This document shows positions 385 through 64,000 of a stretch of DNA of 64,000 nt, piece after piece. The notes beneath the pieces were generated by a model. The model was not told the origin of the DNA. It saw only the letters and a list, made by a program, of their open reading frames with translations, and ran no database searches. Where the stretch lies: NCBI GenBank assembly GCA_965644265.1, contig OZ286470.1, positions 37,696,001-37,760,000 on the forward strand. Reading direction: 5' to 3'. This DNA comes from Glycera tridactyla (lineage: Eukaryota). The first letter of the stretch is position 1. Each line of letters starts with the position of its first letter. Made by a program: the position numbers and the translations under genes.

Positions 385-612
385 CATCCACCCAACCACC
401 CCAGTGCATGCCGACTGGGATATCAAAGGCCGGCCATGTATTCAGGAGCCTTTTCCTATACGCATGTTAAAGATCCACTGCTGCCTTTCGCAAAGAGTAA
501 GGACGGCCCCAAGCAGGCAGTGACTCTTTTCTTAAGCATTTTCAGTTATTTCAGACCAATATAACCCAAGCGGGTTCAAGTGACGTTAAACTCAAACAAA
601 CAAACAAACAAA
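385..612 (+). mobile_element. 5'-truncated SINE-like element with (CAAA)n tail
   Basis: Ends in GTGACGTTAAACTC(AAAC)n, like the other SINE copies in the window. Internal TAAAGATCCACTGCTGCCTTTCGCAAAGAGT is reminiscent of the conserved cores of Deu/Nin/Meta-type SINEs (from memory, not aligned). The left boundary is uncertain. Confidence 0.5.
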
Positions 613-734
613 CCATCCGACAGCTGCATAGCAATGAGGGGTGGTTTGAAATCTGTGAGTATGCAGATGGGATCAATGTTGGAGTCATCCCTCCTCTCAT
701 TTTCCATAATTTGTGTCAGTGAGGCGTCCGACAT
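612..734 (-). pseudogene. Gr-like subfamily B gene B0, 5' fragment of exon 1, cut by a SINE
   Basis: Minus-strand ATG at 734 reads MSDASLTQIMENERRDDSNIDPICILTDFKPPLIAMQLSDG, matching B3 (MSKVASMTQVNGMEKMDDSDSDPICILKDFEPLFIAMQWFGG). Homology stops at the SINE tail. The upstream 1.0-1.7 kb resembles the B3 upstream region (22.5-23.1 kb). Confidence 0.75.
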
Positions 735-1536
735 CTCGTAAGAGCATAGATACACTGTGAATCAGCCGCGACAAGGAGTTCAATGCTCTTGAGTTTTTGA
801 TGACTGTGTTGGAGGAAACTCTCTAGGAAGCTTGTCTTGCATTCATCATATCAACCTGTGTAGATAAGAGCAAGGAATTTACTCAACAAGGAGAAACTTC
901 TCCAGCTTCACTCACTTATCCTGGATATTAATACCTATATATTCTGAAGCAGAATTTGAGGACCGACATGGATGGTGATGGATATCATGTTTTTTTTTCA
1001 CGTGTAAAGATCCATCTAGTATGTAAACTGTTCACTGTTGTTGTTGTTGAGGTAGGTGATGAAGTATTTGAAGAGACTGGGACTGTATCGATAAATATGC
1101 AAAATAGAGATGGATATCAGACCATGCACATTATCCATGGTACAATAATCTTTCCAATCCAGGATGAGTGAAAGAGTAGGGATATAGAACTTGATTGCAC
1201 ACAATCTGTGCTATACAAAGTGTAATGGGCATAGGTGGGATCATTCAAGACTCTTTTTCTGGGTCCTCTGGGAAAGGTGAAAATTTATGAATTCAAGATG
1301 CTCAATGTGTCATTTCTCCTCCAGACTGGGTCACACACCTAAGCTCATGTTGTGCCTGACATCATCAATGAAGTTGAGAACAGAATGAGAGCGATTGCAC
1401 CTAACTAATTCAGTGCCATCATCACCTGGAAAGATAACGATCAAGATTCTCCTTTCTCAGGGATGCCTCCCAGTAGATGTGTGAGGGGGGGGGGGGTAGG
1501 GGAAAGTAGCGGTCATGGTGGTAATGGGTTGTTCTT

Positions 1537-1985
1537 ATGCCATCGTCAATGTTGACCAACACAGAATAAATAACAGGTCACAATGTACATATGTCACCTT
1601 CCTGAATATTATGCTATCAGTTTACTCAACCAACTAACATGAACTTACATATTGCATGAACATAGGTTCCTTTCTTTCATAGTCTGGAATCTTTATTGAA
1701 GAAACTGATGATTAAGAAAAGTCATCATTTGTTTAGATGTAGTATTAGGTCGTTCATTATGCCCTTACCAATCTTGACCGATACAGAATAAATAACAGGT
1801 CGCAATGTGCATGTGTCACCTTCTTGAATATTGTCAGTATACTCGACCAACCAACATAAACTTACATATAACATCAACATGGATACCTTGCCTTCATGGT
1901 CTGGAACCTTTTTTTGAAAGAACTATCAATTCCGAAAAAATACTCATTTGTTCAGATATTACAGAATTAGGTCAGGACATTCCAA
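1537..1985. repeat. Diverged tandem duplication, unit about 222 bp
   Basis: ATGCC...CAATnTTGACC..ACAGAATAAATAACAGGTC.CAATGT.CAT.TGTCACCTTC begins at about 1537 and again at about 1759. A single copy is present upstream of B3 (about 22960-23140). Confidence 0.7.
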
Positions 1986-4127: not shown

Positions 4128-5376
4128 TTACTGAGGCCCCGGTCCAGTGAGAGAAATGTTGTGGGTCATGTTTGAGTGAGTAGCAGGGCCTTGATTCAGA
4201 GATGCCACTTGGAAAACGAGGACAACATATGTCAGCAACGTGCCGATAATCTGAAAATGCAACAATGGCAACATTTCAATCCAATGTGTGGAAATGTGTG
4301 AAAACAAGAATCAATCTGTATTGCTCTGTGAACGCATTCATTCGATCAGTGCATATAAAGCTGACATATTCTGTCAGAACGGTACTGGCAATTTGTGTGT
4401 GCATCTGGTTCTGTCTTAGATGAGATCTCAGTTTACCAATGGTCCACACATTATCTATACATTGCTAATTGTGTATCCCAGGTTTGTATGGACAATTGTA
4501 TAAATGAACATGAAACTGAATCAAGTGAAGAGATTGCCTTTTGTATTTATGATAAATTTCTGCCAGTCTGTATTGATTTCTATAGCAGATGTTATCCATG
4601 ATCATGATCACAATTACTTGATAAAAACTTCAAGTCTTTAGTGAAAGTGAAAGTGTGAAGGGGAAAGTGAGAAAACATACGGTCACCAGGGCTGGTTTAT
4701 CGAGATGAAATAGTCCAAGTACTGTATAGGCAATCTGGGGCTCTTTCAGCTGGTGAACGAACATCAACACCTTGAAAAAGATGTTAGTATATTTACTCAT
4801 AGAACATCCTGTAGGGTGACACCCCGATTCAGTAATAGTGGAGTTCATTTTATGTGATCTCCATAATTTGGAAACTTCACAAGGATTGAAGCACCATTAG
4901 GTGCAATTCGCACATTACTTCCTATAAAACTAGCATTTACAACCATCATCTGGAATATAAGTGATAGGAGTGTTCAATCAAATTCCTGATGTGTCACACT
5001 CGGTACGTTATTTAGTGATGGCATGATACCACCACACACCAGCAGTGTCTTCAACTTTCACACTGAGAAATGGCACCTCGAGTCTCTGTGACTGTCATAA
5101 ATTTCCGCCTTCCGTTAGGGGTCTAGAAGGAGGATTCTTCAACTTTATACCACAGAAGTGACAAAATGAGTGGAATATAGGGGTGTGGGATATAACTTGC
5201 ATATTCCACAGGCAGGGGGGCGTGGCACATGGCTACGTCACAATGGACAGTCACGTGACTCGCTATTGTCTTTTACAGCACTCTCCCGCGTTCCAGCTCT
5301 AGCAAGTGGCAGGTAAACAAACTATGTGTCTGTCTGCTGGCGCTCTTCTAGGCTCCTTTCCCTCTCCCGGTACACA

Positions 5377-5449: not shown

Positions 5450-8400
5450 CGACAGCGACGATGACAGAATAATCGGGAAGGGGAGCACGGGTACACGACA
5501 GTCGGCAGATAAACAAACCACGTGTGTTTGTCTGGTGACGCTCCTCTCGACGCAGGTTCCCTGTCCCTCCACTGAACACGCACTCATGCACACATATTCA
5601 TGCATGCTCACACAAACAATCTGTGGTATAAAAGTAAGAAACAACGCCCGTGGAATATGCAAGTTATATTCAACGAGGTGGGAGTCACGGCGGGAGTTCA
5701 CGAGGCCGAAGGATTCTTTAACTATCCCTCCATGCCCATTGCATGGGCGTCACAATATAGCACAGACGGAACTGACATTACATCAAACCCCCAACAAAAC
5801 AAACATACCGAAAAACTTTCATATCATGTTGCTTTCAGTTTGGTACCCAAAGGTTTTTTTTATGAACACGCCACAAATGTGATTCATTCCAACGATAGTT
5901 AATATCTGAAATTCAGATCAATTGAGTCATTCACAATAGGTGATTGCCAGTGTACAAATAGACAAACACACATCCAGGCTGATAGCAACCTGCAACTCCC
6001 TAACTGTTCGTTTATTGACTTAATAACAGATCGACATATGCACGATGAACAGAGCGTGCATTTGTAATATTATATCTTAAAAAAGAATGCATTTGTAATA
6101 TCATATTCAGACAGAAAGTGCATTTGTGATGTTCTATTCAGACGGAAAGTGAATTTATGATGTAATATTTGCACAATTCTGTCTCCTCCTGCATTTTTTG
6201 CCGGGCTAAAACAGACAAAACCTAAATATACGATAGTCGAGCAATACACCAATAATATTTCTTCACATATTCTAGGTGATGCCCAGACAATAGTTTGAAT
6301 ACTAACACATTCCTTCACTCCCATACAGTTCTGCCTTATTTGAGGAAATATTAGGCATAACCCAACCAATTGATTTATCCACACCCTAAAAAAAGAGGAA
6401 ATACTTATCTGCCAATAAAATGCATTATTCGAAGAACACCAACATATTTCTCAAATGTTTTTCGAAGCCCATCACAATCTTTCACAGATAGGTACAATCT
6501 ATAGGATATAGAATGCATTTCTCAAGTTTTGTTATCACTCACTTCATTGCTTTCGAAGGCTGACTGTGATGCCCCTGGAGTTGACATCCCCATGCGATAC
6601 ATAATAGTGAGAGGGGCCTGGGCCTGGAAATCGAAATGGTAGACTCAGGTTGGGTGACACATCTCTCTATTTGTTACATTCAGATGCAGATATTGTGACT
6701 CAAGTTGGTTTTATATCAGGGAATGCAAACAAGGAATCAATGTCCAATTCATGCACACTGACATCCACTATCATCATCACCTATTCACCCTGCAAAGCAA
6801 ATGACCTGTTGGATTTCATATATATTTCATTGCATCATGAGAGACACGACCTCATCACATCCTCTATATCCAATCTCTAGAAGTGGCTTCTTGGAGATAT
6901 TCCAATCAGAATACCACACCATCCACGAATGCATCAAAAACAATCCATGATGGCTTGCCCATATCATTTCTCTGCTGATGCACATTTGGCTCCATTCATG
7001 AAATCTACTTGGGCATGTACTCCATCCCACTCTTCATATACTACTTTGTCATCACATTGATGCAATCGCACCCTCCCAAATGCATGGGCATTCTCGGTGA
7101 TGAGTTTTCATGTGATCAGGTTCTTCAACTACCATCAAAATTTCATGATTGAACTCCTGATATTGAAGTCGCAGCGAGTGTTTCAGTATACAATTCTCAG
7201 TAATTTATAACAAGCTATCTCGCACTGAATTTCAGGATTTATGTCCAAAATATGAATTCAATCAGTAATTCAGCATGGCCAATGTTTTTTGTCATTAAGT
7301 CCCTTGTGTTTCACCAAAGGTCTTATATCACAAGTCTCGCGTCAAAGAACCTGTAGATATTTTCGTGTACAACAGTAATAACATCCTAAAATTTGCATAT
7401 GCATCAAATGGTTGACAATTGAGACTCGAGTTCATTGGGTGACCTTACATATTGACATGCCAATATATGCAGAGCAATACATGGAGTCCAATTCTGTGTA
7501 TATGAATTGAAACGTGGGTATATAGGAAGACAGACAGACATATAGACAGATGAAGCAAAAGAGAGAGGCAGTGGATAGAGAAAGAGTGAGAGAGACAGAC
7601 AGACAGGCAGTCAGAGTAACAGAAAGACATGAAGGTAGACATGAAAGCAGACTTTAGAGAAAGACAGAATGATGTATGGATGTATGGATGTATAGATGGA
7701 TGGATAAATGGATAGATAGATGGGCGGATAGGTGGGAAAGATGGGGAAAAGTGCCGGCAGCCAGACACATAAGTTGGCAGACAGAAGGGCAGGGAGATGA
7801 TATGAGAGAAAGTGATTGATTGATAGATAGATGAAGAGAGAGAGCATCTAGCTACTGTTGCTATCATTCACGATGACATTTTGAGATTGTTTCTTGCAAT
7901 GGTCACGTTGAGATGTTGTAATGGAGAAACTCACCCACTTTTGGATAGTGACTGATGCAGCAAACATAAGAAGGAAGCAGGTGGATGTAAACAGTATTCC
8001 ATAGATGTGGATGAGCTGGGTTGCTGTGTCTAGAGTTGATATTGACATGGCATAAGTTGAAAGACAGATGACTGCCATGAACAAGACTGCCTGGATACCA
8101 ATCACACACAAACTCATCTCATCGACCTTAACAACCAAATCAGATAACTGTAGATGCTTCCATCTCAGCAACTTGATATCCTCTTTTCTAACTACTCCAT
8201 TTTGTAGTATCTTCTCCAAACGGATCGTCACATCCTTGAATTCTTGTACTAGTATAAATGATGCTATAAGTGTAAATACATTTGATATCAGATAATGGAC
8301 GGAAATTATGTGAAAAACGACAAGAGAAACTCCAACAGAGATGCGGAAAGCATTCACAGGCTCCAACCAAGGGTAAGCAATCAGTGATAAGATGTCACCC

Positions 8401-8861
8401 ATTCCAATGTTGCAATATAATGCCAATATGCCCCACACAGAAGATAATATTGGAGTGAGAGTGGCAATGATGATGATTATCATAACAAAACACTTGATTT
8501 TTCTTCTATATTTTGGATAGCTGGAGTCAGAGACACTAGAAAGTTCTTCAATGAAGGGGATGATCTTCTGCCAGGCATGGTGATTGTAAAAGTTGGTCAA
8601 TACATTGTGTGTGAGTATGAGTGCAAAAGGAAGTCGAGATAGGAGATTGTCTAGCTCCATGGGACCAAAGATGATCGACAACAGGCAGCGTATCATGAAC
8701 ATCAAGGTCAGAACCAAATGCAAGCGACAGCAACCAAAATAGTGTAGGCGTTGTAACATGGTGTACTTTTGGCCTGGTCTGTAAACCACTCCAGCAAATA
8801 TACGCATGTAAATTATTAATGGATGGAAATCCTCGTACGATGGTGAATTGTTGCTCTCCAT
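4128..8861 (-). CDS. Gustatory receptor-like 7TM chemoreceptor/ion channel, subfamily A (A1), 406 aa
   Basis: Exons 8861-7935 (MESNNS...SVTIQKW|gtgagt), 6623-6543 (AQAPLTIMYRMGMSTPGASQSAFESNE), 4770-4681 (VLMFVHQLKEPQIAYTVLGLFHLDKPALVT) and 4250-4128 (IIGTLLTYVVLVFQV...GPQ*). All introns are GT-AG and phase 0; the frame is open (1221 nt). It carries the Gr TM7 TYhhhhhQ motif and an LRxKHxxLxxxVxxVD motif before TM5. Confidence 0.92.
5131..5723. mobile_element. About 565-bp insertion with direct-repeat ends and non-nested inverted repeats, nested in a SINE in A1 intron 2
   Basis: Flanked by AGGATTCTT(C/T)AACT at 5131-5144 and 5710-5723. Inverted pairs at 5144-5155/5621-5632 and 5190-5212/5647-5669. 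Absent at the paralogous A5 site (about 36570-36600). Confidence 0.55.
5372..5448. repeat. (CA)n microsatellite
   Basis: Near-perfect CA run, seen directly. Confidence 0.97.
6056..6175. repeat. About 31-bp tandem repeat, about 4 units
   Basis: Repeated GTGCATTTGT(A/G)AT.T.ATATT...AC.GAAA units; also present in the paralogous A5 intron (about 36895-37015). Confidence 0.65.
7510..7847. repeat. Purine-rich GACA/GATA/GGAT low-complexity tract in A1 intron 1
   Basis: Mixed tetranucleotide repeats; paralogous tracts at about 38320-38700 and 56170-56340. Confidence 0.75.
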
Positions 8862-11915: not shown

Positions 11916-11996
11916 CTCATTGCTGTAACATTCTGACTGTGATGCCCCTGGATTTGACATTCTCATTTGATACATCAAACTGAGAGGGGCGTGAGC
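11916..11996 (-). pseudogene. Orphan exon 2 of Gr-like gene A2 (exons 3-4 missing; exon 1 probably in the N-gap)
   Basis: ttctgatttcag|AHAPLSLMYQMRMSNPGASQSECYSNE|gtgagt, 81 nt, open; 6 nt differences from A6 exon 2. Both flanks align to the A6 locus, but no exon 3 or exon 4 homolog lies between here and A1. Confidence 0.8.
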
Positions 11997-12884: not shown

Positions 12885-13559
12885 NNNNNNNNNNNNNNNN
12901 NNNNNNNNNNNNNNNNNNNNNNNNNNNNNNNNNNNNNNNNNNNNNNNNNNNNNNNNNNNNNNNNNNNNNNNNNNNNNNNNNNNNNNNNNNNNNNNNNNNN
13001 NNNNNNNNNNNNNNNNNNNNNNNNNNNNNNNNNNNNNNNNNNNNNNNNNNNNNNNNNNNNNNNNNNNNNNNNNNNNNNNNNNNNNNNNNNNNNNNNNNNN
13101 NNNNNNNNNNNNNNNNNNNNNNNNNNNNNNNNNNNNNNNNNNNNNNNNNNNNNNNNNNNNNNNNNNNNNNNNNNNNNNNNNNNNNNNNNNNNNNNNNNNN
13201 NNNNNNNNNNNNNNNNNNNNNNNNNNNNNNNNNNNNNNNNNNNNNNNNNNNNNNNNNNNNNNNNNNNNNNNNNNNNNNNNNNNNNNNNNNNNNNNNNNNN
13301 NNNNNNNNNNNNNNNNNNNNNNNNNNNNNNNNNNNNNNNNNNNNNNNNNNNNNNNNNNNNNNNNNNNNNNNNNNNNNNNNNNNNNNNNNNNNNNNNNNNN
13401 NNNNNNNNNNNNNNNNNNNNNNNNNNNNNNNNNNNNNNNNNNNNNNNNNNNNNNNNNNNNNNNNNNNNNNNNNNNNNNNNNNNNNNNNNNNNNNNNNNNN
13501 NNNNNNNNNNNNNNNNNNNNNNNNNNNNNNNNNNNNNNNNNNNNNNNNNNNNNNNNNNN
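12885..13559. other. Assembly gap (675 N)
   Basis: N run. Flanks match 56288 and 57591, a 1.3-kb interval that contains A6 exon 1. Confidence 0.99.
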
Positions 13560-18378: not shown

Positions 18379-21315
18379 TCAATGTTGTAGTGTAATATTC
18401 AGATGCAGGCATTCTTCAACTGTGCACATTGATACATAATCAGTCGAAGATTTCAGTTGAATGACCAGAACCACGTAGGACAACAGCGTGCTCGCAATCT
18501 GAAAATGTAAAATGTGAATACATTTGAAAACTTGACTTTGCTACGAGACATTTTCACAGAAACAGATAGGGAAGGAGCTACATGAGAAAACTGGGAGGAA
18601 ATGATAACATAGGCTGTCATTTGCAGGGAGAAAGATGAGTAGTCATGTAGCCCTCCTTGTCACTTGAAATGATTCATTGTCAAAAACAGATGTGATATCT
18701 TAAAGTTCAGTCAACAACATCCTCATCTTTGCCAGTGGCATCCTATCGTTCTCCATGAAAGATGTTGATGAAAATCATCATGGCTGCACCGATGTCTATC
18801 ACCGAGGACTCACCCATCACTGTTATATTCATCATTTCTGAACCTAAGCATGTATGATATCATCCATCGGTCATCACTTTGGGGAATTAGGATTTGGATG
18901 TACATGTAGACTACCCTAGACCACCAATCACTCAAACACTGACACAATACGCTTTCCCATGAGTGTCACCGTGCTTTCTCCGATAAGGAAAGGTGATGAG
19001 AATCACCATGGCTGCCCCTAATACCTATTTTACTCATCGTGACCAATCTGTATCATGTATCATCCCCTCAATGATAACAATTTAAATGTATGTAGTTGAC
19101 TTACTGAAATAAAGGCTGGCCTGTCCAAAGGCATTAGGTCGAGGATATGATAACCCACTTGTGACTCTCTCAGATGAGTTATGAATAGCATAACCTGTGG
19201 GCAGAAAACATCATAATCATGTATGAGGATGGTTGTATGATGTATGTTCTTGGAGATTCAACTATTGTATCCACAACAGGCTTCAAAACTCACGCACATT
19301 TCACAGATACTTTTATAAGATTATCCAACTCGATGGCTGGTTGGCTGGTTCATTATTTTACTTCTAGTCACCTGAAGATGAGCAAAAGTCGAAACGCCCA
19401 CGCTGAGGGCACGTATGGGATCCAATGAAAGATAAGAAAATATATGAAATTCACAGGAAGTCATCCCTGGTGTTCAGATAGGAGAAAGAGAGCAGACTTG
19501 TAGAGCTGTAACTGGCAGATGAGTCGGTAATCGAATGAGATAGTAGTATAATGCATGAAGTGGATTTCAGGTCATACTACCTCTAGATCGAGTGAACTTC
19601 GTTCTTCCGGTGAGAATCTCCATATTTTCATATTACATAGTAATTCCAAAGGATTTCCAGCCTGGAACATCGAAATGATATTTTCAAGTTATAGCATATG
19701 TATGATAGTACTTGTGATTCATGATTGATGGCGCATCTACCCATCTTGCAAATTTTTGAAACTGAATTTGAAAAGTGGCATGAGATAATGTCAGAAATAA
19801 GATTTCAACCTGCCTTGGACTCAATCAGTGAATTACTTTCTCCGGTCAATTGGTTACAATATTGATTGGTGGATAGCTTGGATGCTTCGTCAATCAATGA
19901 TGTCAACCTGTTGAAGGGTTGGTTTTCCAAAGAGACATATACAGGCAATACAGCCATTAACTGATAGTTCAAACTGCATTCAAGAAGATATCAAATCGAC
20001 ATTCATTTAGGCTACATAGAATTGATGGTTTCAATATTATACGACTGTTCTCACACAAAAACTGGGTATAGTGATATACTCATCCCACTGCAACAATCAC
20101 AGTGTTCAAAGCTTGCGTGAGGCCATTCTCTCTAAAAGTCGACTGTACAGTGACAGAGGAAGTATGATGAGGGCATGACTTGTTCTCAAGCATTCCCTAG
20201 TGATACCTAAGATCATTTCACAATAGCATAATCAAAATTGGGAGCGCTGGACACACGTTTCATTTGACAGCATGCTCCGCTAAGCTTCTTGAATGTATGT
20301 GTACGCTCTATGTTTTCATCAGGTACATACTCACCTCTCTATTGATGGCGATTGATGCTTTGTAAATACTCATAAAGAGGCATGTCTTGACGATGATCCA
20401 GAAGATCAATACCATCGCCTGGTTGACATCAGTTATGTTTTGAGAGAAAACATAGATGACCAGGCATACAAGGATCATCAAGGATATAGCTGAAAGTCCA
20501 ATACTGGAAAAACATGTCTTATTCACTCTCCTCACAATACTACAAAGATAGATATGCTTCTCCCTCAGTCGACCCAACTCTGGTGCAACTTGCTCATTTT
20601 CAGCCAAAATCTGACCAAGCTGAACTTTTATGTGTCTGAATTCTCTTGCAATTATCAAAGACACTGCCATCAAGTAAACATGCTCAAAAAGGCTGTTCAT
20701 TATCACAACACCATATATAATTGCAGTCAGGAAGATTAGGGTGGAGTAAGCAGAATCACCCTCATGGAATGGAAATGCCAGTAGTAATACTGAACTAGCG
20801 TGTACAGGATGAGATAATAATGAGTCAATGATGATTCCAAGAAGAAAGATAGTCAGCACCGATGCAACCCCAATGGTGGAGAATCGTATCAGCCAGAAAA
20901 TTATTTTCCTATAATTAAGATATTGTAGATTGCTGATCTTGATCATACTGATGAGAATCGGTTCCAGTGTCCTCCACATGAACAAGCCATATAGGAATGA
21001 CAGTATTGCTTGGAAGAAAATCAAAGAAGGAACAAAATAGATGAGCAGTGCTTCCAGTGTCCATTCACCCATGATCAATGCAATTAGTGTTTTTGCTGTT
21101 ACGGACAGGGCAAGAGCAGTCAGAATCGAACTATATACCACCTGGAATATACTTCTGAGATGGTGCTTTTCAGAATATCTATATGTGTATCCACCAAACC
21201 ACTGCATGGCAATGAAGAGTGGTTCGAAATCTTTGAGTATGCAGATAGGATCAGAGTCGGAGTCATCCATCTTCTCCATCCCATTAACTTGTGTCATTGA
21301 TGCTACCTTCGACAT
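18379..21315 (-). CDS. Gustatory receptor-like protein, subfamily B (B3), 423 aa
   Basis: Exons 21315-20335 (MSKVAS...ASIAINRE|gtgagt), 19661-19581 (AGNPLELLCNMKIWRFSPEERSSLDLE), 19194-19105 (VMLFITHLRESQVGYHILDLMPLDRPAFIS) and 18498-18379 (IASTLLSYVVLVIQLKSS...LNITLQH*). GT-AG, phase 0, open. The start Met is chosen by conservation with B4 and B0. Confidence 0.92.
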
Positions 21316-41719: not shown

Positions 41720-41809
41720 TTCAGATACTTCTCACAAGTACTGCAAAATAGAATTGATCATATAAACTAGTATTAAATTATTTTATAGCAATAGTTAATC
41801 CTGATATTC

Positions 41810-44033: not shown

Positions 44034-46630
44034 ATGGCGAGCATCAATGAAAATAAATCAACTACCCAAAAATCAAGACCAGCAATGGAAATGAAGGGAT
44101 TGAAGGGAGTCAAGATTGGACATTTGAATATTCGAGGGTTACTTAAAAAACTTGGGGAAATTCGTATACTACTTCTACAAAGTGATATTGATGTCTTGAT
44201 ACTTGCTGAAACCTTTCTGTGTGAATCACATTCTAATGCAGAGCTAGCTATTCCTGGTTTTCATATTGTACGACTAGACCGAACTAAGGAAAGTGGCAAG
44301 ATAAGAGGAGGAGGATTGCTTATATATGTGAAAAACAAAAGGGTTTTGGAATTGCTTGATGATCGAATCATTTGTAGCCATGATATTGAAGCCATGTGGC
44401 TTAGATTGATATTACCTGATACCAGACCGATATATTTATGTGCAGTTTACAGACCTCCAAGTGGTAATCCTGATATTTATCTTGATTGGTTGGAAGAAAA
44501 TACAATAGATCTGAGCATGTCCTCAGTGAGTGACGTGTTAATTATTGGAGACACAAACTTAGATTATAGAAATAAAGCAATCTCAAAAAATTATAGAAAT
44601 ATGCTCAAAAATAACAATCTTAGTCAACTTATAGATTGTGATACCAGGATTACCACAACGAGCCTTACTATTATTGACCACATAATTGTAAACCATACTG
44701 ACCTCTATCATCAGCATGCAACACTAGATTGTGGTCTTTCGGATCATAGCCTCATAGTTGTGGCGAGGAAAAAGAAACCTGTTTCAAAGAATTTTGAATT
44801 TGTCTACTTTAAAGACTTTAAGAATGTAAATTATGAGGAGTTGTCATCAGATATTAGTCAAGTAGATTGGGGAAATTTGTACATTTGTGATGATGTGAAT
44901 AAATGAGGAAATTTTAAATCGACCTATACCATTAAAGAGACATGAAGTATACGAAAATTGGCCAAAATGGCTTAATGGTGAATACTTGGATCTTGTGAAA
45001 TCTCGCGAAGAAGCAAGTAGGAAATTCAGATTATCTGATACTGATGAAAACAGGGAAACAAAAAAATACCTAGAACATAAATGTAAAAATCTGAAACCAA
45101 CGCTTCAACGTGAATTTATAAACTCAAGCTTTGAACAATATCGTAATGAACCAAAAAAACTTTGGGCAACAATCAAAGAGTTTTGAGGGAATAATAAGGG
45201 GCAGACAGAAATTATAAAAATTGGAGATACAACGGATCCATTAGAAATAGCTGATAGGCTCATAACCCATTTTAGTAGTATTGGAGAAAAATTAAGCAAC
45301 AAAATTAACAATGATGGTGCTGATCCTTTATCTGACTTTCCATATGACTTAAAAAATAAACTTAATCTACATATATTACATCAAGAGCAAGTGGAATCTA
45401 TTATTCGGAAACTGTCTGCAAACAAGTCAGGTCAGGATGATGGTTTGTCTGTTAAAATAGTGAAAGGTTGTATGTCTGCCTTGGCTCCCCTATTGACACA
45501 AATTTTTAACATCAGCATCACCACTGGTATATTTCCCAATCAATGGAAACTGGCATCAATTGTTCCTTTATTCAAAGAGGGGTCACGATCTGATGAATCA
45601 AATTATAGGCCAATTAGTCTCCTTTCGACCCTAAGTAAAATATTAGAAAAGTTGGTTCATCACTAAGTATCTGCATTTTCTTAATGTCATGGTCTACTGT
45701 GTCGGGAGCAGTCAGGGTTCCGGGAGGGTTGCTCCACTGGTACTTGTTTACTTGAATTTCTTGACAAAATTTATCATAATATAGAAAAGGGTTGTACCAG
45801 TGGGGTAATTTTCCTGGACCTAAAGAAGGCTTTTGACACGGTGGACCATGGCATTCTCTTGAAAAAATTGAGTAGATATGGTGCAGATGAAATGTGTATA
45901 CAATGGTTTGAGAGTTACCTACGCAATCGATTATGTCACGTCAAGTGTAATGGCATGCGTTCTGGTGAGAGAGTTGTAAACTGTGGCGTCCCACAGGGAT
46001 CCACGCTGGGACCCTTATTATTTTGTATTTATGTGAATGATATTACCCATTTTATGAGAGGTCCCAGTGTGAATCTTTATGCTGACGACACAGCTATACT
46101 TGTTGCTGATACTAATCCTAAAATTGAAATTAGAAAGTTCATTGAATAAAATTAGCACTTGGTTAAAATGTAATAAATTGAGTTTGAATTTAAGAAAAAC
46201 TAAAATAATGATTTTGGGAACCAGAATGCAAGTCAAGAGAACAACAATAACAGTGACAATTGACTCTCACATGGTTGATATATTACCTGAATTTAAATAC
46301 CTTGGGGTGATTCTAGACAGTTGTTTGAATTTCTCCTCACATGCTGAGTATATAAGATCTAAAACTATTGGCAGGGTGGGGGTCCTGGGGAGACTCAGGG
46401 GAGTGATTAGTCAAAATACTGCCTTGATGCTCTACAGGTCCCTCATACTGCCGGTATTTGACTATTGTGACATCGTCTATGATGGTCTAGGAGTGGCAGA
46501 TGCTTCAAAACTCCAAAAGGTCCAAAATAAGGCTTTTAGAATAACAACCAATAGTGATTATAGAGTACGGACCAATGATATTCATAGTGCTTTAAAACTG
46601 CCATTTTTGGACCAACGTAGACGATGTCAC
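44034..46630 (+). pseudogene. LINE ORF2, apurinic endonuclease + reverse transcriptase, decayed
   Basis: KIGHLNIRGL, VLILAETFL, LCAVYRPP, IIGDTNLD, IIDHIIV and LSDHSLI (APE); NYRPISLL, FLDLKKAFDTVDH, GVPQGSTLGPLLF, LYADDTA and LPVFDYCDIVY (RT). Stops at 44906, 45186, 45666 and about 45684; frameshifts near 44910 and 46130. Confidence 0.92.
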
Positions 46631-49600
46631 CCATCATCTATCACCCATCATCTATCATTGTCACGTATCACCCTTTCCATCTTGTTTATATTCATAATTA
46701 TATTCATATCATACCACATTAACGGGTCATCAATGCATTCACCATGGTAAACTGATGAGACAAGGTAGATCTTTGTCACGTAGACAATAATATTGAAAAG
46801 GTATCGATTGCAATGCTCACACAACAATGCTGAAATGTTTGTGAGAAATTTGGTAAGACCAATGTTGATAATGGGCAAACCCCATATTTAAATATTTGTA
46901 TGTTTATGTTTATGTATGTTTATTTCCATATCAGTTCATACCTCATATATCAAATAATTATTTTTTTCATCCATATTTTTCATTTTTTCAATGGTATAAG
47001 ATTGGGAAAACATGAATTAGTAAGTTTGTCAACCTGGAGAAGCCCAATCAGGGCAATTGGGTCATATACAACATCCATTATGAAATATTGATTGAATGCT
47101 ATGTATTGTGCTGAATTTTATTGTATGTATATGTTGACGAAGTTAAATAAAGTAAAATCAATCAATCAATCAATCCACCTTAGCAACCAAATCAGATAAC
47201 TGTAGATGCTTCCAACTCAGCAACTTGATATCCTCTTTTCTAACTACTCCATCATGTAGCATCTTCTCCAAACGGATCATCACATCCTTGAATTCTTGAA
47301 CTAGTATAAATGATGCTAGAAGTGTGAATATGTTTGATATCAAGTAATGGACGGAAATGAAGTGGAAAACGACAAGAGAAACTCCAACAACGATGCGGAA
47401 AGCATTCAAAGGCTCCAACCAGGAGTAGGCAATCAGTGATGAGATGTCATCCATTCCAAGGTTGCAATATAATGCCCATATGCCCCACACAGAAGATGAT
47501 ATTGGAGTGAGAGTGGCAAGGATGATGATAATCATAACAAAACCCTTGATTTTTCTCCTATATTTTGGATAGCTGAAGTCAGAGACACTAGAAAGTTCTT
47601 CAATGAAGGGGATGATCATCTGCCAGGCATGGTGATTGTAAAAGTTGGTCAATACATTGTGTGTGAGTATGAGTGCGAAAGAAAGTCGAGATAGGAGATT
47701 GTCTAGTTCCATGGAACCAAAAATGATCGATAACCGGCAGCGTATCATGAACATCAGGGTCAGAATCAAATGCAACCAAAACAACAACCAAAATAGTGTA
47801 GGCGTTGTAACGTGGTGTACTTTTGGCCTGGTCTGTAAACCACTCCAGCGAATATTAGCATGTAGATTATTAATGGATGAAAATCCTCGTACAATGATGA
47901 ATCATTGGTTGTGAATACATTGCTCTCCATGATTCAGCTCAACTCCAGGCTTATGGTAGAAGTATGGCAGGAGCAATTTCCATTTGCAAGCAACTCTGAC
48001 TTGTCCTTCTACTGAGAATGGCGTCTATGTCATAAGCAACAGGAGATTGTGTTTACACACCATCATGCCGAATGCAAAAGTGGCATTCCAGCTAGTCTGT
48101 TTGGTATGGGCACATAACCACATCAAGGCCAGACCAACGATCCATTGTCCGATGATAGTTACAGAGAAGACATTGATGAAAAAAAAAACACTGAAAAAAA
48201 TATCCACAGGACTCGGTGATGAACTATTGACCGAGTATAAAGTACCGAAGGCATGATTGCATAGGACAAGTCGCAGTAGTGAACGAAATTGTTGATGATC
48301 TGAGAAGATGATCATCTGATCATATATCAGGATATTTCGAACACACAGCATTACATTTCTCACGAAATTCATCTACTAAACATCACTCAGGAGAATTTCC
48401 AAATTATGATTTACATTCGATGATAGGTAAGAATATGACCCGCTTCAGCTGTACCCGTATGACCATGGAGAAAATCGAGAATGAGGGATTGGATTGCTAC
48501 TTAGATTCTCTATTTGTTGACACTATACAAGAGTTGTTCCACGTGAGGCACACTTGACAACCTGAGTCTTGAGATATGCATTTGTGAAGTAGCAGCACTA
48601 GGTTACAGTTTTCATCGATATAGAGAAAGCCTATTCCTCCACCTGAAGACATTAATCCATCCAATATTAATATAAGGAGCAAAATACCAAATTCTCTCTT
48701 TTTTTTCAAGGAATCGATTATTCTTTGTCCGACTCGGGTTCATGAAAATACAACTCGCTGAGACGGTTATAGTACTGGGAGACAGATTTGATGTATGGAG
48801 GCCTATCCTTATATGAGCAGACTAGAACCACTGGTGTCCTTTGGAAAGAGTGATGGATTGCCACCAGTGTTGCTGACGCTTCTTTACAGCATTTTTAGTC
48901 TGAGCAAACATAATCTCTTCACAAGTCAGATCACATCTCTCCATAAACAACGTCATGGTACCACCCATTCCCCTGCTTTCATTTCTCCACCATCCCTACC
49001 CTAGAGTATCTATGAGTTTTCAACTTCTGTGAGAGACCCAGGAGTCTTCAATGATCCCACCGATGTGCATTGCACTAGCAGATTTGATACTGATGTGACG
49101 TTAAACCAAAACCAACCAATCTCTCTCTATTTCTCCTCCTCTCCTTTCCTCTCCCCTGGCCCCCTCATACCTATTTTCCTTCCCCTCCTTGTCTCCATAT
49201 TCCTCATATTTCTCCGCCTTTACTCCCCTCCTAGGATCCTCTTTTTTTTTGCATTGGCCACCTCGCCCTTGCCGTTGCCTTTCATCCTACCTGCTGCCCG
49301 CCTTTACTGCACTCATCCCTGATAATTTTCACCAATTGAGCCTTCTCCATTTCATCTTCCCCCTTGTTGTATCCCGGTTTCCTGCTGATTTCTTCAATCT
49401 TGATGGTTTTTATGCCACCACAAGTGTGATGTGGCAGTTGGAAATCAGCATCTCGAGAGCAGACGATGAACCCTCATGATGGAAATGGATTTGAAGGTGT
49501 AAGAGACAGGACTGATAGTTTTCGTCTCACTTTTCTGTATAACTTACCTGCTTCATATGTGATATCAATAAAGTGAATACTCTCCACAATGAGCCCGAAG

Positions 49601-54123: not shown

Positions 54124-57100
54124 TTACAGTCCTGTGTGAGAAATGTTGTTGCTCATGCTTGAGAAAGAGGCACGGCCTTGATTTGGATATGCTACTTGAA
54201 AGACGAGGACAACATATGTTAACAAAGTGCCGATGATCTGAAATGGAACAATCACAACATTACAATCAATATGATTCTATGTGGAAACAAGGATGAATTT
54301 ATATTGGGCTGTAAATGTGCCAGTTTGACAAAGGTCCATACAACAGCTATAGGTTGCCAGTGCAGCTTCTGTAAATGAGTTTACGCATTTTATTTTCTCC
54401 AATCTTGATGTTGATAATACATTCGCGAATCGATCACTATATGAGAGAGCAGGAGATGAATCAATCAGACAGATTACCCTCGGGATGTGGAAAATGGATT
54501 CTGGAACTGAACTCAGGTGTCATCCACATCCACCATTAACCCTTGCCATTATCATGAAAAAGATTGAACACTGACCGAATGCAAGAAAACAGATGCCATT
54601 ATGTCAAATTATGTATTGTGTGGGTGAATTGATGTAACCCTGATGGAAAAGAAAATGATCCAGATCGAGAAAAATTTGGAGCCTTGGAGTCTCTACTGAA
54701 AGTCAAAATGCTTAGTGAAATTCTGTGGATACATACCGTCACCAGGGCAGGTTTATCAAGATGAAATAGTCCAAGTACAGTATAGACGATCTGGGGCTCT
54801 TTCAACTGGTGAACAAACATCAACACCTGGAAAACATATCACTGTATTCATTCATAATATTTTCAGTGGGAAGACCCCCTGATCTGGTGAAAGCGAATAT
54901 CATTTTATGCGATCCCCTTCTTTGGAGAATCTCATAAAGCTAAAACCACCACGATGCACGATTCTCATATTGCTGCTAACAATGTTGGAATTCACCTTGG
55001 ACACATTTATCAAGCCTGGATTATGGGAATGTGAATCGAGTCCAACTGTTTCTAATCATTTCAGTGGTCACAGTGAGCAGAGCTTGAAGTAATGTAACGA
55101 GCAGTACTGTGTCTCTTGTGACACCTACAGTGTCTGAGATTTCATACGTTAGCAACAGACTTCGATCAGCAAGTCACGATTATCATTCAGGGATTCACAG
55201 AAAAAAACCAATGCCCTCATGATGTTGTATTCGCAAAATCTGTGACCCACTGCACCATCCTCTGAAGAAACAGCGAGATTAAATCTATTCTTCAATTACT
55301 CTCTCTACTTCCTAATAAATCGAGAAGTGACTCATCTACAGATGAGATGCATTGGATTAGCAATACATTTCTCAAATATCTTTGAAGTATATTAGAATTC
55401 TGTCAAAGATATATATGGAGCCTAATTTGCATATCCTGAGTGTTGGTATCACTCACCTCATTGCTATCACAGTCTGACTGTGATGCCCCTAGATTTGACA
55501 TTCTCATTCGATACATCAAACTGAGAGGCGCGTGAGCCTGAAATTAGAAGAGGTAGATGCAGTTCAAGTCACACATCCGTCTATGTGTTGCATTGAGAAG
55601 CATACTCCTTTACAATATCATGACTCAAGTGGGATTTCAATCAGGAAATGCAAACCAGGAATCAATGTCGGTTCCATGCAGATTGACATCCATTATCACA
55701 CATGTGAGCTGCTAAATATATGACTTACCAAGCAAGATTTGATTTTTTTCCATAGCGATGCATTTCCACCCTCCGGTCATAACAAAAATACAATTCAGCT
55801 CAGGAGCTCCTATTAAGATGTCTATCTTTGGTGAAATCCCTCAAGACTACCCAAAGTTCAAGACCGAACTAATAATATCAATGGTACCGTTAGTGTAAAG
55901 GTATATCATTCTCAGTGAATCATAGCAAGATGTCTCTCACTGATCTTTTAACTGTTCAAAACACAGATTCATTAAGTGATTTATCTATGTCAATATTTTG
56001 CTTCAGAGTCTCTCATATTTGTCCTGAGTTTTATGTCACATGGAACTCTGATATCAGAGGTGCACTAGATATCAATAACTCCGTGTACATATTCCATAAC
56101 ATCATAAACATCGTGCACATGTTTCCATGGTTGCAACCCAATATTCCCACAAGATCATATACGCTTTGCGTTGGATGGATAGATGGATGAATGGATGGAT
56201 ATAGGGCAGAAGAAAAGTGAGTCACATACAGACAGAGAGATAGAGAGTGAGACTGATAGACAGATTGAAAAGGCGATGAGATAAGAGAAATAGATAAATA
56301 TACATAGATAGATAGAGAAAGAGCAAGAGAGGGACAGAGAGCCCAAGCACAGGTGCCATTCCACACAGGTACAATATTGGGATCATTCTATGCAATGGTC
56401 CAGACAAGATATGATGCTGGAGGGTAACTCACCCATTTTTGGATAGTGACTGATGCGGTAAACATGAGGAAGAAGAAGGTGGACATAAACAACATCTCAA
56501 AGATGATGATGAACTTGGTTGCTGTATCCAAAATCAATATAGACATAGCATATATTGAGAGACAGGTGACTGTCATGAACAACACCACTTGGTTACCGAT
56601 CACACACAAACTGATCTCATCCACCTTAGCAACCAAATCTGATAACTGTAGATGCTTCAGTCTTGGCCGCTCAATATCCTGTTTTCTGGTTACTTCATCG
56701 TGTGGTATCTTTTTTAAATGGACCAGCACATCCTTGAACTCTTGCACTAGGATGAATGTTGCTAGAAGTGTGAATATATTGGATATCATGTAATGGGTGG
56801 ACATGAATACCAAAACAAGGAGAGACACTCCAACAGAGATGCGGAAGGCATTCTCTGGCTCCAACCAGGGGTAGGCCATCAATGATATTAGGTCGTCCAT
56901 TCCTATGTCATAATATAATGCCAAGATTACCCACGTAGAATATGTTATCGGGGCTAAAGATACCATTATTATGATGATGCTGACAGAACACTTGATTTTC
57001 CTTCTGTATTTGGCATAGCTGAAATCAGAGACATTAGAAAGTTCTTCAATGAAGGGGATGATCTTCTTCCATGCATAATAATTGTGTAGGGTGATCAATC

Positions 57101-57374
57101 CACAGTGCATGAATATGAGTGTGAGTGGAAGTCGAGGTAGTAGGTTTCCCAGATCCATCTGACCAAGGATGATTGAGAACAAACAGCGGGTCATGAATGC
57201 CAGAACAAGAAGCATCAGCACACAACAAGCAACACGATGCAGACGTTGTAGCATGGTATGATTTTGTCCTGATCTGTAAACTACTCCACCAAATATTCGC
57301 ATGAAAACGATCAGAGGATAAAGATCCTTATATAATAGTCCATCATCCACATCTGTGAACACATCGCGCTCCAT
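54124..57374 (-). CDS. Gustatory receptor-like protein, subfamily A (A6), 408 aa
   Basis: Exons 57374-56433 (MERDVF...SVTIQKW|gtgagt), 55537-55457 (AHAPLSLMYRMRMSNLGASQSDCDSNE), 54826-54737 (VLMFVHQLKEPQIVYTVLGLFHLDKPALVT) and 54237-54124 (IIGTLLTYVVLVFQV...NISHTGL*). GT-AG, phase 0, open (1227 nt). Confidence 0.92.
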
Positions 57375-61674: not shown

Positions 61675-61790
61675 TGGTTGTTGGTTGGTTGGTTGGTTCT
61701 GGTTTAACGTCACGTCAGCACCGTCTGGGCTATATTGTGACGCCCATGCAATGGGCATGGGTGGGATCTTCCAACACTCCTCCTGCGAAA
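61675..61790 (-). mobile_element. SINE-like 3' fragment of the same family as 16133-16280
   Basis: Reverse complement reads ..GATCCCACCCATGCCCATTGCATGGGCGTCACAATATAGCCCAGACGGTGCTGACGTGACGTTAAACCAG(AACC)n. Confidence 0.75.
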
Positions 61791-62320
61791 GTGATCCAGG
61801 ACAATGTCTATGAGAAGTGAGAGGATGTAGATTGTTGAATTTGGATGCATTTTGATTACAGATAATTCATTTTCACAACATTGAACATGATGATTATGAC
61901 AATAATGATAATAGCTATGGAGATGATAATGACATCATAAGAACAAATGATCATATCACCAATGATAATGATGATTATCATAAAAAATGTGATGTTGACA
62001 ATACTGATTTGGATGACAGTGATGATTGCTGCTACTGCCTGAAGATTATGATGAAAGGAGATAGAGGAGACTAAGGAAGAAGAGGAGGAGAAGGGACAGG
62101 AAGGAGCAGCGAGGGTAGGAGGTGGGGAGGGGAGAGGATAGGTTGGTTGGTTGATATCTCATGATCACCTTCATGATCATGTTGGGACGCCCATGCAATG
62201 GACGTATGTGGGGTCATTCAAGATCCCTCCTACGGAGCAGAGCATTCATGAAATTTGCAGACTCGGATGACTAGAAGGAGGAGGACACAGGATGAGGTTC
62301 TCTTCACAGGCCAGAACCCT

Positions 62321-63546
62321 TCAATGTTGTAGTGTCATATTCAGGTGCAGGCATTCTTTAACTGTGCACAATGATGTATAATCAGTCGAGGATTTCAGTT
62401 GGATGACCAGAACCACGTAGGACAGCAGCGTGCTTGCAATCTGCAGAAAGATAGGTATATACATTTGAAAACTAGATTTTGATACGGGATATCTTCACAG
62501 AAACAGTTGGGCAAGAAACTATATAGAAAAACTAGGGGAGGGTGAGGACATAGGCTGCCATTTGCAGGGAAAAAATTTAGCACTCCTGGTCATTTGAAAT
62601 GATTCATCGTCAAAAACAAATGGGATATCTTGAAGTTCAGTCAACAACATCCTTATCGTCGCCAGTAGCATCATATTGTTCTCAATGAAGAATGTTGTCG
62701 ATCACCAAGGACTCACCCATCACTGTTATATTCATCATTACTGAGCCTAAGCTTGTATGATATCATCAGTTATCACTTTGAGGACTGAGGATTAGAATGT
62801 TGACTGACCAAGACCACCAATAACTCCAGCACTGACGCAATTCTCTCTCTCTTTCTCTTTTTCTTTCTCTTGTTTTTTTTTCTCTCTCTCTCCCTCTCTC
62901 CCTCCGCTGTCATTGTACTGCCTCCAATGAAGAAATGTGATGGAAATGTCCATGGCTGACTTTAAAACCTATTTTACACATCATGATCAATTGGTATTAT
63001 GTATTATCCCCTCAACCATAGCAATCTGGATGTATGTGGTCAACTTACTGAAATAAGTGCGGGTTTGTCCAAGGGCATGAGGTCGAGGATGTAATAAATC
63101 ACGTGTGACTCTCTCAGATGAGTTATGAATAGCGTTACCTATGTGCAGAGAACATCATATTCAAGTATGAGGATGATTGTATGATGTATGTTCTTGCAGA
63201 TTCCCCTAATGGATCCTTGACAGGCTTCAAAACTCTGCAAAATTCACAGATACTAATATAGGATTAACCAACTTGATGACTGGTTCGTTATTTCACTTCC
63301 TGTCACCAGAATATGAGCTGAGGTCGAGACGTCCATGCAAGGGGCATGTATGGGATCCAATGAGAGATGGACAAATATATGAAATTCGCAGCAATGTGGC
63401 AGATAAGTGTTGTAATCAAATGGGATAGTGATATAGTGCATGGAGTGGATTTCAGGTTATACTACCTCTAGATCGAGTGAACTTCCTTCATCGGGTGAGA
63501 ATCTCCATAATTTCATACTACACAGCAACTCCAAAGGATTTCCAGC
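62321..63546 (-). CDS. Gustatory receptor-like protein, subfamily B (B7), exons 2-4; exon 1 beyond the window end
   Basis: Exons 63546-63466 (AGNPLELLCSMKLWRFSPDEGSSLDLE), 63138-63049 (VTLFITHLRESHVIYYILDLMPLDKPALIS) and 62440-62321 (IASTLLSYVVLVIQLKSS...LNMTLQH*). Canonical sites and open; closest paralog of B3. Confidence 0.88.
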
Positions 63547-64000
63547 CTGGAACATCAAAATGATATTTTCAAGTTATGGTATATGTATGATAGTTCTCAT
63601 GATCTTTGATTGATGGCGCATCTACTAATCTTGCAAGATGAATTCGATTATTGGCATGAGTTAATGTCAGAAATTAGATCTCAACATGCCTGGAACTCAA
63701 TCAGTGAATTACTTTCTGTGGCCAATTGGTTACATTGTTGATTGGTGGATGGCTTGGATGCTTCATCAATCAATGATGTTAACCCGTTGAAGGGTTGGTT
63801 TTCCAAAGGGACATATACAGGCAATTGAGGATGTGGCAGCCGTTAGCTGATCGTTCAAGCTACACTCAAGGATATATCAAATCGATATTCATTCAGGCTA
63901 CATAGAATTGATGGTTTCAATATCATGCGACTGTTTTCACACAAATACTGGGTATAGTGATGTACTCATCTAACTGAGACAATGGCAGTGTTCAAAGCTT

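What the first reader, a model, noticed from the sequence alone, without database searches (positions are those of the whole stretch)
612..64000. Tandem array of at least eight gustatory-receptor-like channel genes in two deeply diverged subfamilies
Seen: eight same-strand loci (B0, A1, A2, B3, B4, A5, A6, B7), four of them complete and open. A and B exon 1 proteins are barely alignable by eye, yet both keep identical 81-nt and 90-nt phase-0 exons. Established: C-terminal phase-0 introns and the TM7 TYhhhhhQF motif are hallmarks of the Gr/Or/Grl 7TM ion-channel superfamily, and non-arthropod animals were generally described with few Grl genes. Inference: this is a lineage-specific chemoreceptor expansion undergoing birth-and-death evolution. 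The ORF track shows only exon 1, so automated annotation could easily truncate these genes.
Basis: partly seen in the sequence, partly recalled or inferred. Interest (0 to 1): 0.8.

Follow-up and report, generated by a model that had tools for sequence, protein, structure and literature searches.

The report
Annelid gustatory-receptor-like channel gene array
The window holds eight minus-strand copies (four complete, a fifth completed just outside it) of insect-taste-receptor-like ion-channel genes in a segmented worm, part of a family of about 78 loci, far more than the dozen or fewer reported for other annelids in the papers I could read.

Summary
A1, B3, B4 and A6 are complete four-exon genes of 406-423 codons. 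B7 is complete once its exon 1, 0.2-1.2 kb past the window end, is added. A5 is broken by a LINE and a 2-nt insertion. A2 shows only exon 2. B0 is a 43-codon relic.

Both subfamilies (25-28% identical) have an 81-nt exon 2, a 90-nt exon 3 and three phase-0 introns. The last intron sits six codons before the TM7 motif, TYVVLVFQV in A and (S/T)YVVL(V/A)IQL in B.

- B4 exon 1 passes Pfam 7tm_6.
- The best solved-structure sequence matches of the family profile are Orco.
- The AlphaFold model of B4 exon 1 matches only insect OR/Orco/GR structures (TM 0.54-0.72).
- A profile hit in an oyster carries a strong 7tm_7 domain.
- dN/dS is 0.20-0.53.

The mitochondrial gene order marks the genome as annelid. 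The window is part of a 28-locus, 406-kb array, and the genome holds about 78 loci.

This is a lineage-specific expansion of a known family. Expression, ligands and channel activity are untested. Spliced proteins were not sent to the search tools.

The parts
612..737 (-). B0: relic of the first ~43 codons of a B-type exon 1. Homology ends at 612 and a stop follows.
   Evidence: tblastn gives 58% identity to B3 aa 64-106. No B-type remainder was found downstream in the genome search.
7935..8861 (-). A1 exon 1 (309 codons, TM1-6), donor GTGAGT, phase 0.
6543..6623 (-). A1 exon 2 (81 nt, phase 0).
4681..4770 (-). A1 exon 3 (90 nt, phase 0).
4128..4250 (-). A1 exon 4 (TM7, IIGTLL-TYVVLVFQV, stop codon included).
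11916..11996 (-). A2 exon 2 (81 nt), the only A2 exon that can be read. Exon 1 falls in the gap. Exons 3-4 are missing through a ~4-kb deletion relative to A6.
12885..13559 (.). Assembly gap at the position where A2 exon 1 is expected from colinearity with A6. It was not filled.
   Evidence: 12884 matches 56289; 13560 matches 57590
20335..21315 (-). B3 exon 1 (327 codons).
19581..19661 (-). B3 exon 2 (81 nt).
19105..19194 (-). B3 exon 3 (90 nt).
18379..18498 (-). B3 exon 4 (TM7, IASTLL-SYVVLVIQL, stop codon included).
29975..30955 (-). B4 exon 1 (327 codons). This is the piece that passes Pfam 7tm_6 and was folded.
29102..29182 (-). B4 exon 2 (81 nt).
26222..26311 (-). B4 exon 3 (90 nt).
25343..25462 (-). 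B4 exon 4 (TM7, MAGTLL-TYVVLAIQL). Intron 3 upstream of it contains the gap 25934-26062.
47173..47930 (-). A5 exon 1, 5' part. ATG at 47930; a 2-nt insertion near 47781 shifts the frame.
38975..47172 (+). Full-length LINE inserted in antisense orientation into A5 exon 1. It ends in a 4-nt microsatellite tail at 47172, and 3 nt (GGA) are duplicated at the junction.
38786..38974 (-). A5 exon 1, 3' part, up to the GTGAGT donor.
37354..37434 (-). A5 exon 2 (81 nt).
36149..36238 (-). A5 exon 3 (90 nt).
35566..35688 (-). A5 exon 4 (TM7).
56433..57374 (-). A6 exon 1 (314 codons).
55457..55537 (-). A6 exon 2 (81 nt).
54737..54826 (-). A6 exon 3 (90 nt).
54124..54237 (-). A6 exon 4 (TM7).
63466..63546 (-). 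B7 exon 2 (81 nt). B7 exon 1 lies outside the window (L026:201-1181, minus strand) and is intact.
63049..63138 (-). B7 exon 3 (90 nt).
62321..62440 (-). B7 exon 4 (TM7).

Best explanation
The window is a 64-kb slice of a 406-kb, 28-locus tandem array of gustatory-receptor-like (GRL) genes in an annelid genome. These genes belong to the Gr/Or/GRL superfamily of seven-transmembrane ion channels.

Each gene has a long exon 1 that encodes helices 1-6 and the ligand-pocket region. Three phase-0 introns follow, then an 81-nt exon, a 90-nt exon and a last exon of about 120 nt. The last exon encodes the pore helix TM7b with a TYhhhhhQ(V/L) motif.

By analogy with BmGr9, Orco and MhOr5, the proteins should form tetrameric ligand-gated cation channels. 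The T and Y would shape the ion path, the Q would swing into the pore on opening, and the final aliphatic residue would form the hydrophobic plug. This step is inferred, not shown.

The array grew by segmental tandem duplication with exchange between paralogues. It loses copies through LINE insertion, deletion and truncation, which is birth-and-death evolution. The intact copies are under purifying selection. The most likely role is chemoreception, which is also inferred and not shown.
For: Gene models:
- Four complete GT-AG models of 406-423 aa have no internal stops.
- The 81-nt and 90-nt exon lengths are identical in both subfamilies, and all introns are phase 0.
- The 90-nt exon 3 is present in all five clades sampled.

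Family membership:
- B4 exon 1 scores 31.4-31.6 bits on Pfam 7tm_6 against a cut-off of 25.8. Of 24 paralogues, 6 hit 7tm_7 and 4 hit 7tm_6 at E <= 0.1.
- With the family profile, the five best matches among solved-structure sequences are Orco or Orco-type odorant receptor chains (E 0.011-0.028), colinear from the N-terminus.
- The AlphaFold model of B4 exon 1 has pLDDT 78.3 and pTM 0.77. The top 21 Foldseek hits in the PDB are all insect OR/Orco/GR chains (query-normalised TM-score 0.54-0.72 for the first 20, 0.45 for the 21st). The next hit scores 0.12.
- The profile finds oyster protein XP_062595237.1 at E 1.8e-20, and that protein scores 91.6 bits on 7tm_7.
- The TM7 exon starts exactly six codons before TY. 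This is the intron position described for Daphnia, insect and nematode Grs (PMC2680840).
- The gate position holds L in Orco and V in MhOr5 (PMC11100771), the same residues as in the B and A clades.

Selection and turnover:
- dN/dS is 0.20-0.53 in 15 paralogue pairs.
- Duplication blocks: 57590-64000 matches 13560-20114, 48096-56289 matches 9211-12884, and 35404-38690 matches 3978-7831.
- B7 exon 1 is a mosaic of two paralogues.

Host and family size:
- The mitochondrial gene order is annelid.
- The genome holds about 78 loci.
Against: - There is no expression or splice-junction evidence.
- Only exon 1 could be searched and folded by reference. The small exons alone give no Pfam hit, and full-length spliced proteins were not sent to any search or folding tool.
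- Most paralogues miss the Pfam gathering scores when scanned as exon 1 alone.
- The last motif residue is V or L in the A and B clades, not the canonical F.
- GRLs outside arthropods have documented non-chemosensory roles, including development in a cnidarian, as summarised in PMC6150509.
- Continuity across the gap in B4 intron 3 is not proven.
Confidence: 0.88

Rival explanations
1. The genes are real GRL-type 7TM channels, but they are not chemoreceptors. They would sense light, temperature or internal metabolites, or act in development, as some GRs and GRLs do elsewhere.
For: GR and GRL members with non-chemosensory roles are documented, including light and warmth sensing in Drosophila and developmental roles for ancestral GRLs (summarised in PMC6150509). 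There are no expression data here.
Against: The family has about 78 loci in tandem arrays with rapid turnover, pseudogenes and moderately relaxed constraint (dN/dS 0.2-0.5). This is the usual signature of environment-facing chemoreceptor repertoires. Single-function sensors usually stay at low copy number.
Confidence: 0.25
2. The array is mostly a decaying gene graveyard. The open frames are recent duplicates that have not yet picked up stops, and they are not expressed.
For: Three of the eight window loci are plainly defective (B0, A5 and, through its missing exons 3-4, A2). Several further loci in the array carry stops.
Against: dN/dS is well below 1 even for old pairs with dS of 0.6-0.7. 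Splice sites, exon lengths and the TM7 motif are kept across clades that are only 20-28% identical. Of the 28 array loci, 19 keep a full open exon 1.
Confidence: 0.05
3. They are 7TM G-protein-coupled chemoreceptors or another multipass family, and the resemblance to Gr/Or is superficial.
For: Sequence similarity to Pfam 7tm_6 and 7tm_7 is weak for most copies.
Against: The top 21 Foldseek hits are all insect OR/Orco/GR, and the first other fold scores TM 0.12-0.20, including a GPCR at 0.17. The best PDB sequence hits of the profile are Orco only. The diagnostic intron and motif are present.
Confidence: 0.02

Closest known systems
[quoted passage not shown]
   Same: Same phylum and the same superfamily. 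The TYhhhhhQF-type TM7 motif is shared.
   Different: This genome has about 78 loci, of which 28 lie in one array. The best database relative is only 43% identical and most are 25% or less. No orthology to the Capitella or spionid GRLs was tested, because their sequences were not at hand.
Daphnia pulex Gr expansions (58 Grs, PMC2680840)
   Same: Lineage-specific tandem subfamilies in an aquatic invertebrate. Three phase-0 C-terminal introns are present, the last one six codons before TYhhhhhQF, and degenerate pseudogene copies lie beside intact genes.
   Different: Daphnia is an arthropod and this genome is an annelid. There is no mid-gene intron here. In the A and B clades the final motif residue is V or L rather than F.
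Insect GR, Orco and OR channels with solved structures (BmGr9, DmGr43a, DmGr64a, AbOrco, MhOr5, AaegOR10, AgamOR28)
   Same: The fold of helices 1-6 matches (TM-score 0.54-0.72). The T, Y and Q of the pore-helix motif are present, and the gate residue is aliphatic as in Orco (L) and MhOr5 (V) (PMC11100771).
   Different: Sequence identity is 9-18%. Tetramer formation, ligands and gating are untested here.
Saccostrea cucullata uncharacterized protein XP_062595237.1 (7tm_7, 91.6 bits)
   Same: It is a lophotrochozoan GRL-type protein found by the family profile at E 1.8e-20.
   Different: It is 813 aa long. The profile matches it in two stretches and Pfam 7tm_7 also matches in two stretches, so it may be a fused two-gene model. 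Pairwise similarity to the annelid proteins is very low.

Membership tests
Gr/Or/GRL 7TM ion-channel superfamily (Pfam 7tm_7 PF08395 / 7tm_6 PF02949) | Sequence match to the family profiles | tested here: met
   B4 exon 1 scores 31.4-31.6 bits on 7tm_6 against a cut-off of 25.8. Six of 24 paralogues hit 7tm_7 (best E 1e-4) and four hit 7tm_6, mostly below the cut-offs, because only exon 1 could be scanned. The homology is also transitive: the profile hits an oyster protein at E 1.8e-20, and that protein scores 91.6 bits on 7tm_7.
Gr/Or/GRL 7TM ion-channel superfamily | OR/GR fold of the transmembrane bundle | tested here: met
   The AlphaFold2 model of B4 exon 1 has pLDDT 78.3 and pTM 0.77. 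The top 21 Foldseek hits in the PDB are all insect OR/Orco/GR chains (TMq 0.54-0.72 for the first 20, 0.45 for the 21st), and the next fold scores 0.12. The test covers helices 1-6 only, because TM7 lies in exon 4.
Gr/Or/GRL 7TM ion-channel superfamily | TM7 motif TYhhhhhQF near the C-terminus | tested here: met
   The A clade has TYVVLVFQV and the B clade has (S/T)YVVL(V/A)IQL. The exact form is found in the C7, C28, C39, C34 and C1 loci: TYTVIVFQF, TYAIIVFQF, TYMIVVFQF and TYFVLLLQF. T/S, Y and Q are kept throughout, while the last residue is V, L or I in some clades.
Gr/Or/GRL 7TM ion-channel superfamily | [quoted passage not shown] | tested here: met
   All three introns are phase 0 with GT-AG sites. 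The last exon starts with six codons (for example IIGTLL or IASTLL) before TY or SY. The criterion is as stated in PMC2680840 and PMC9998090.
Gr/Or/GRL 7TM ion-channel superfamily | Seven transmembrane helices with an intracellular N-terminus | tested here: inconclusive
   Hydropathy peaks and the model give six long helices in exon 1 plus one in exon 4. Membrane orientation was not tested.
Gr/Or/GRL 7TM ion-channel superfamily | Tetrameric ligand-gated cation channel | not testable with these tools
   Full-length spliced proteins have no reference, so they were not folded or modelled as complexes. This needs expression and electrophysiology.
Insect odorant receptors proper (Or/Orco clade) | Placement inside the insect Or clade, with Orco as partner | not tested
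   No phylogeny with insect Ors was built. The host is an annelid. The 7tm_6 hit of B4 therefore reflects superfamily-level similarity.
7TM GPCR chemoreceptors | GPCR fold | tested here: not met
   The only GPCR in the Foldseek list has TM 0.17 and probability 0.20.

The most novel reading that the evidence does not exclude
This annelid has independently built a large repertoire of about 78 GRL-type ionotropic receptor genes that serves as a main chemoreceptor family. This would parallel the arthropod GR/OR radiations. The regularly interleaved A and B genes might encode partners of heteromeric channels, in the way Or and Orco pair.
Probability: 0.3. Interest if true: 0.65.

Novelty: new member of a known kind. 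Interest (0 to 1): 0.45.

Why it matters
Little is known about the receptors behind chemical sensing in marine annelids. The papers I could read list 12 GRLs in the first annelid genomes and two or none in several others.

A family of about 78 loci in tandem arrays, with intact pore motifs and purifying selection, gives a concrete candidate receptor set. It could be tested in work on annelid taste and smell, larval settlement and reproduction. It also adds an independent radiation of the insect-type ionotropic chemoreceptor family in Lophotrochozoa.

There is a practical point as well. Gene callers that stop at exon 1 lose the pore helix. The database relatives of about 315 aa (for example P0001) are such exon-1-only calls.

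Tried and rejected
- The word-index protein search with B4 exon 1 found nothing at E <= 0.001.
- A single-sequence search of PDB sequences gave only a chance antibody hit. The profile search was needed.
- Pfam scans of the 27-40-aa exons 2-4 on their own gave no family hit, because the pieces are too short.
- I looked for the rest of B0 downstream and in the genome list and found none.
- I looked for A2 exons 1, 3 and 4. Exon 1 falls in the gap and was not filled. Exons 3-4 are absent through a deletion.
- I tried to name the species from mitochondrial proteins. TGA-coded Trp breaks every gene into pieces too short for the length window of the protein search, so I stopped at the phylum, taken from gene order.
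- The first regex screen for exon 3 in other clades failed on a poor pattern. A second pattern worked.
- Robertson 2015 (Chem Senses) is not in the held library, so its gene counts are not cited.
- The joined (spliced) proteins were built only inside scripts, to check frames, identity, hydropathy and dN/dS. They were not sent to Pfam, homology, structure or complex tools.
- No contig here looked human.
Full report
**Layout**

All receptor pieces lie on the minus strand. A six-frame ORF list shows five long ORFs of two kinds. tblastn with them finds every exon-1 copy in the window. Comparing the regions downstream of each exon 1 gives three short conserved blocks per gene. Alignments and a script fix their borders.

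| Locus | Coordinates | State |
|---|---|---|
| B0 | 612-737 | 43-codon relic |
| A1 | 4128-8861 | complete |
| A2 | 11916-11996 | exon 2 only |
| B3 | 18379-21315 | complete |
| B4 | 25343-30955 | complete |
| A5 | 35566-47930 | broken |
| A6 | 54124-57374 | complete |
| B7 | 62321-63546 | exons 2-4; exon 1 outside the window |

**Observation check**

Exon 2 is 81 nt and exon 3 is 90 nt in every copy of both subfamilies. All three introns are phase 0 with GT-AG sites. Joined inside a script only, A1, B3, B4 and A6 give open frames of 406, 423, 423 and 408 codons. A and B proteins are 25-28% identical, A1 and A6 are 69% identical, and B3 and B4 are 59% identical.

B7's exon 1 lies 0.2-1.2 kb beyond the window end and is intact (L026:201-1181). 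B7 is therefore a fifth complete gene.

B0 is only the first ~43 codons of a B gene followed by a stop. No remainder was found nearby.

A5 has an ATG at 47930 and a 2-nt insertion near 47781. An 8.2-kb antisense LINE at 38975-47172 splits its exon 1.

A2 shows only exon 2. Its exons 3 and 4 are removed by a ~4-kb deletion relative to A6.

**Assembly gaps**

The flanks of gap 12885-13559 are colinear with A6 positions 56289 and 57590. That interval is 1.3 kb and contains all of exon 1. A2's exon 1 is therefore unread and nothing can be said about its frame. I did not fill it.

Gap 21797-22029 is 482 nt upstream of the B3 start codon.

Gap 25934-26062 lies in B4 intron 3, which is 759 nt against 606-608 nt in B3 and B7. 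No exon is expected there, but continuity across it is not proven.

**What the genes are**

Spliced proteins have no reference, so every database step was done exon by exon and the joined step was left out.

- B4 exon 1 passes Pfam 7tm_6 with 31.4-31.6 bits against a cut-off of 25.8.
- I fetched 22 further exon-1 copies from the same genome. An alignment of 24 exon-1 proteins (A7: four from the window and twenty of these) has six members hitting 7tm_7 and four hitting 7tm_6 at E <= 0.1.
- A profile of that alignment has Orco or Orco-type odorant receptor chains as its five best matches among solved-structure sequences. E-values are 0.011-0.028 and the match is colinear from the N-terminus.
- An AlphaFold2 model of B4 exon 1 reaches pLDDT 78.3 and pTM 0.77. 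Its top 21 Foldseek matches in the PDB are all insect OR, Orco or GR chains. The query-normalised TM-score is 0.54-0.72 for the first 20 and 0.45 for the 21st. The next fold scores 0.12 and a GPCR scores 0.17.
- The exhaustive profile search finds 463 relatives at E <= 0.001 but only two at E <= 1e-30. One relative, oyster XP_062595237.1, scores 91.6 bits on 7tm_7.

The last exon carries the TM7 motif: TYVVLVFQV in A and (S/T)YVVL(V/A)IQL in B. The exact TYhhhhhQF form appears in other clades of the genome. The exon starts six codons before TY. This is the phase-0 intron position described for Daphnia, insect and nematode Grs, alongside the three ancestral C-terminal phase-0 introns (PMC2680840, PMC9998090). 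The small exons alone are too short for Pfam.

**Mechanism (inferred)**

In BmGr9 the motif's T forms a hydroxyl ring and the Y contacts pore lipids. The Q swings into the pore on opening and the F forms the closed-state plug. The plug position is L in Orco and V in MhOr5 (PMC11100771). The annelid A and B proteins keep T/S, Y and Q and carry V or L at the plug. They are therefore compatible with a tetrameric ligand-gated cation channel. Nothing here tests assembly, ligands or gating.

**Host**

The assembly is 2.04 Gb in 207 contigs, and the window is C31:37,696,001-37,760,000. Contig C207 is a 15,366-bp mitochondrial genome with all protein genes on one strand. Their order is cox1-N-cox2-D-atp8-Y-cox3-Q-nad6-cob-W-atp6-R-H-nad5-F-E-P-T-nad4L-nad4-C-M-rrnS-V-rrnL-...-nad1-I-K-nad3-S-nad2. 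From my own knowledge this is the conserved annelid arrangement, as in Lumbricus. Other agents' notes on this genome also call it annelid.

**Family size and evolution**

A profile search of the whole genome gives 87 matches, which collapse to about 78 loci, a lower bound.

| Location | Loci |
|---|---|
| C31 37.588-37.994 Mb (the array holding this window; 19 with an open full-length exon 1; all but one on the minus strand) | 28 |
| C31 89.6 Mb | 6 |
| C31 2.67 Mb | 1 |
| C7 | 11 |
| C28 | 4 |
| C39 | 25 |
| C34 | 1 |
| C1 | 2 |

Sampled C39, C34 and C1 loci have their own TM7 exon with the exact motif.

A maximum-likelihood tree of 24 exon-1 proteins gives five well-supported clades. A and B each have 100/100 support, and B sits on a long branch. 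The 90-nt exon 3 is found in all five clades.

dN/dS in 15 paralogue pairs is 0.20-0.53, including pairs with dS of 0.6-0.7. This indicates purifying selection with the moderate relaxation usual for chemoreceptor families.

Within the window, 57590-64000 matches 13560-20114 (B7 with B3), 48096-56289 matches 9211-12884 (A6 with A2), and 35404-38690 matches 3978-7831 (A5 with A1). A B-A-A block was therefore duplicated.

B7 exon 1 is a mosaic. Its first ~270 nt are 96-100% identical to B3. The remainder is 94-99% identical to a paralogue 117 kb away. This points to gene conversion or unequal crossing-over.

Together with the relic, the LINE-hit copy and the deleted copy, this is birth-and-death evolution.

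**Comparison with what is known**

In the library I could search, annelids are credited with 12 GRLs in the first published genomes (PMC6223215). The spionids have two each and three siboglinids have none (PMC11730519). GRLs are known across Protostomia, including Annelida (PMC7746228). I found no paper describing a large annelid GRL array. Robertson 2015 is not held.

The closest database relative is 43% identical.

**Verdict**

This is a lineage-specific expansion of a known family, so it counts as a new member of a known kind. Its interest is moderate. It supplies candidate chemoreceptors for a phylum where few are known, but it does not change how the family is understood. Expression, ligands and channel function remain to be shown.

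Noticed in passing
window 38975-47172 (+): A full-length LINE with three ORFs (39190-40098 plus 40120-41226, 41810-42775, and 44028-46750 in pieces) sits antisense inside A5 exon 1. It ends in a 4-nt microsatellite tail at 47172, and 3 nt (GGA) are duplicated at the junction.
   Followed up: partly
window 33353-35016 (-): Reverse-transcriptase-like and endonuclease-like ORF fragments lie between B4 and A5. They look like a second, degraded non-LTR element.
   Followed up: no
L026:201-1181 (window-equivalent 64201-65181): B7 exon 1 is a mosaic. Its first ~270 nt are 96-100% identical to B3, and the rest is 94-99% identical to the B paralogue at C31:37877733-37878770. This suggests gene conversion or unequal crossing-over.
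   Followed up: partly
window 9211-20114 versus 48096-64000, and 3978-7831 versus 35404-38690: Segmental duplication of a B-A-A block at 75-93% nucleotide identity, introns and intergenic DNA included.
   Followed up: partly
G000:C39:25.70-26.22 Mb (L028, L029): A second large array of about 25 more divergent GRL loci, each with a TM7 exon reading TYAIIVFQF. The profile matches only the C-terminal ~185 positions of their exon 1.
   Followed up: partly
G000:C207 (L022, L023): A mitochondrial genome of 15,366 bp and 35% GC, with all protein genes on one strand in the annelid gene order. ARAGORN places trnG after trnC and not between trnY and cox3.
   Followed up: partly
L024 / L025 (ENA ERZ23486739 scaffold_49738; GCA_013332675.1 JAAUYI010073130.1): A 315-aa exon-1-only ORF, 43% identical to the A clade, sits on ~2-kb contigs of a metagenome assembly. 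It is probably DNA of another annelid in that sample.
   Followed up: no
window 31100-31177 and 21534-21796: A His-codon (CAT/CAC) repeat lies just upstream of B4. A GA-rich microsatellite abuts the gap upstream of B3.
   Followed up: no
window 4128-4250, 18379-18498, 25343-25462, 54124-54237, 62321-62440: All C-terminal tails after TM7 carry N-x-S/T sequons. B tails also carry two conserved Cys residues (C..V..C), which fits an extracellular C-terminus.
   Followed up: no
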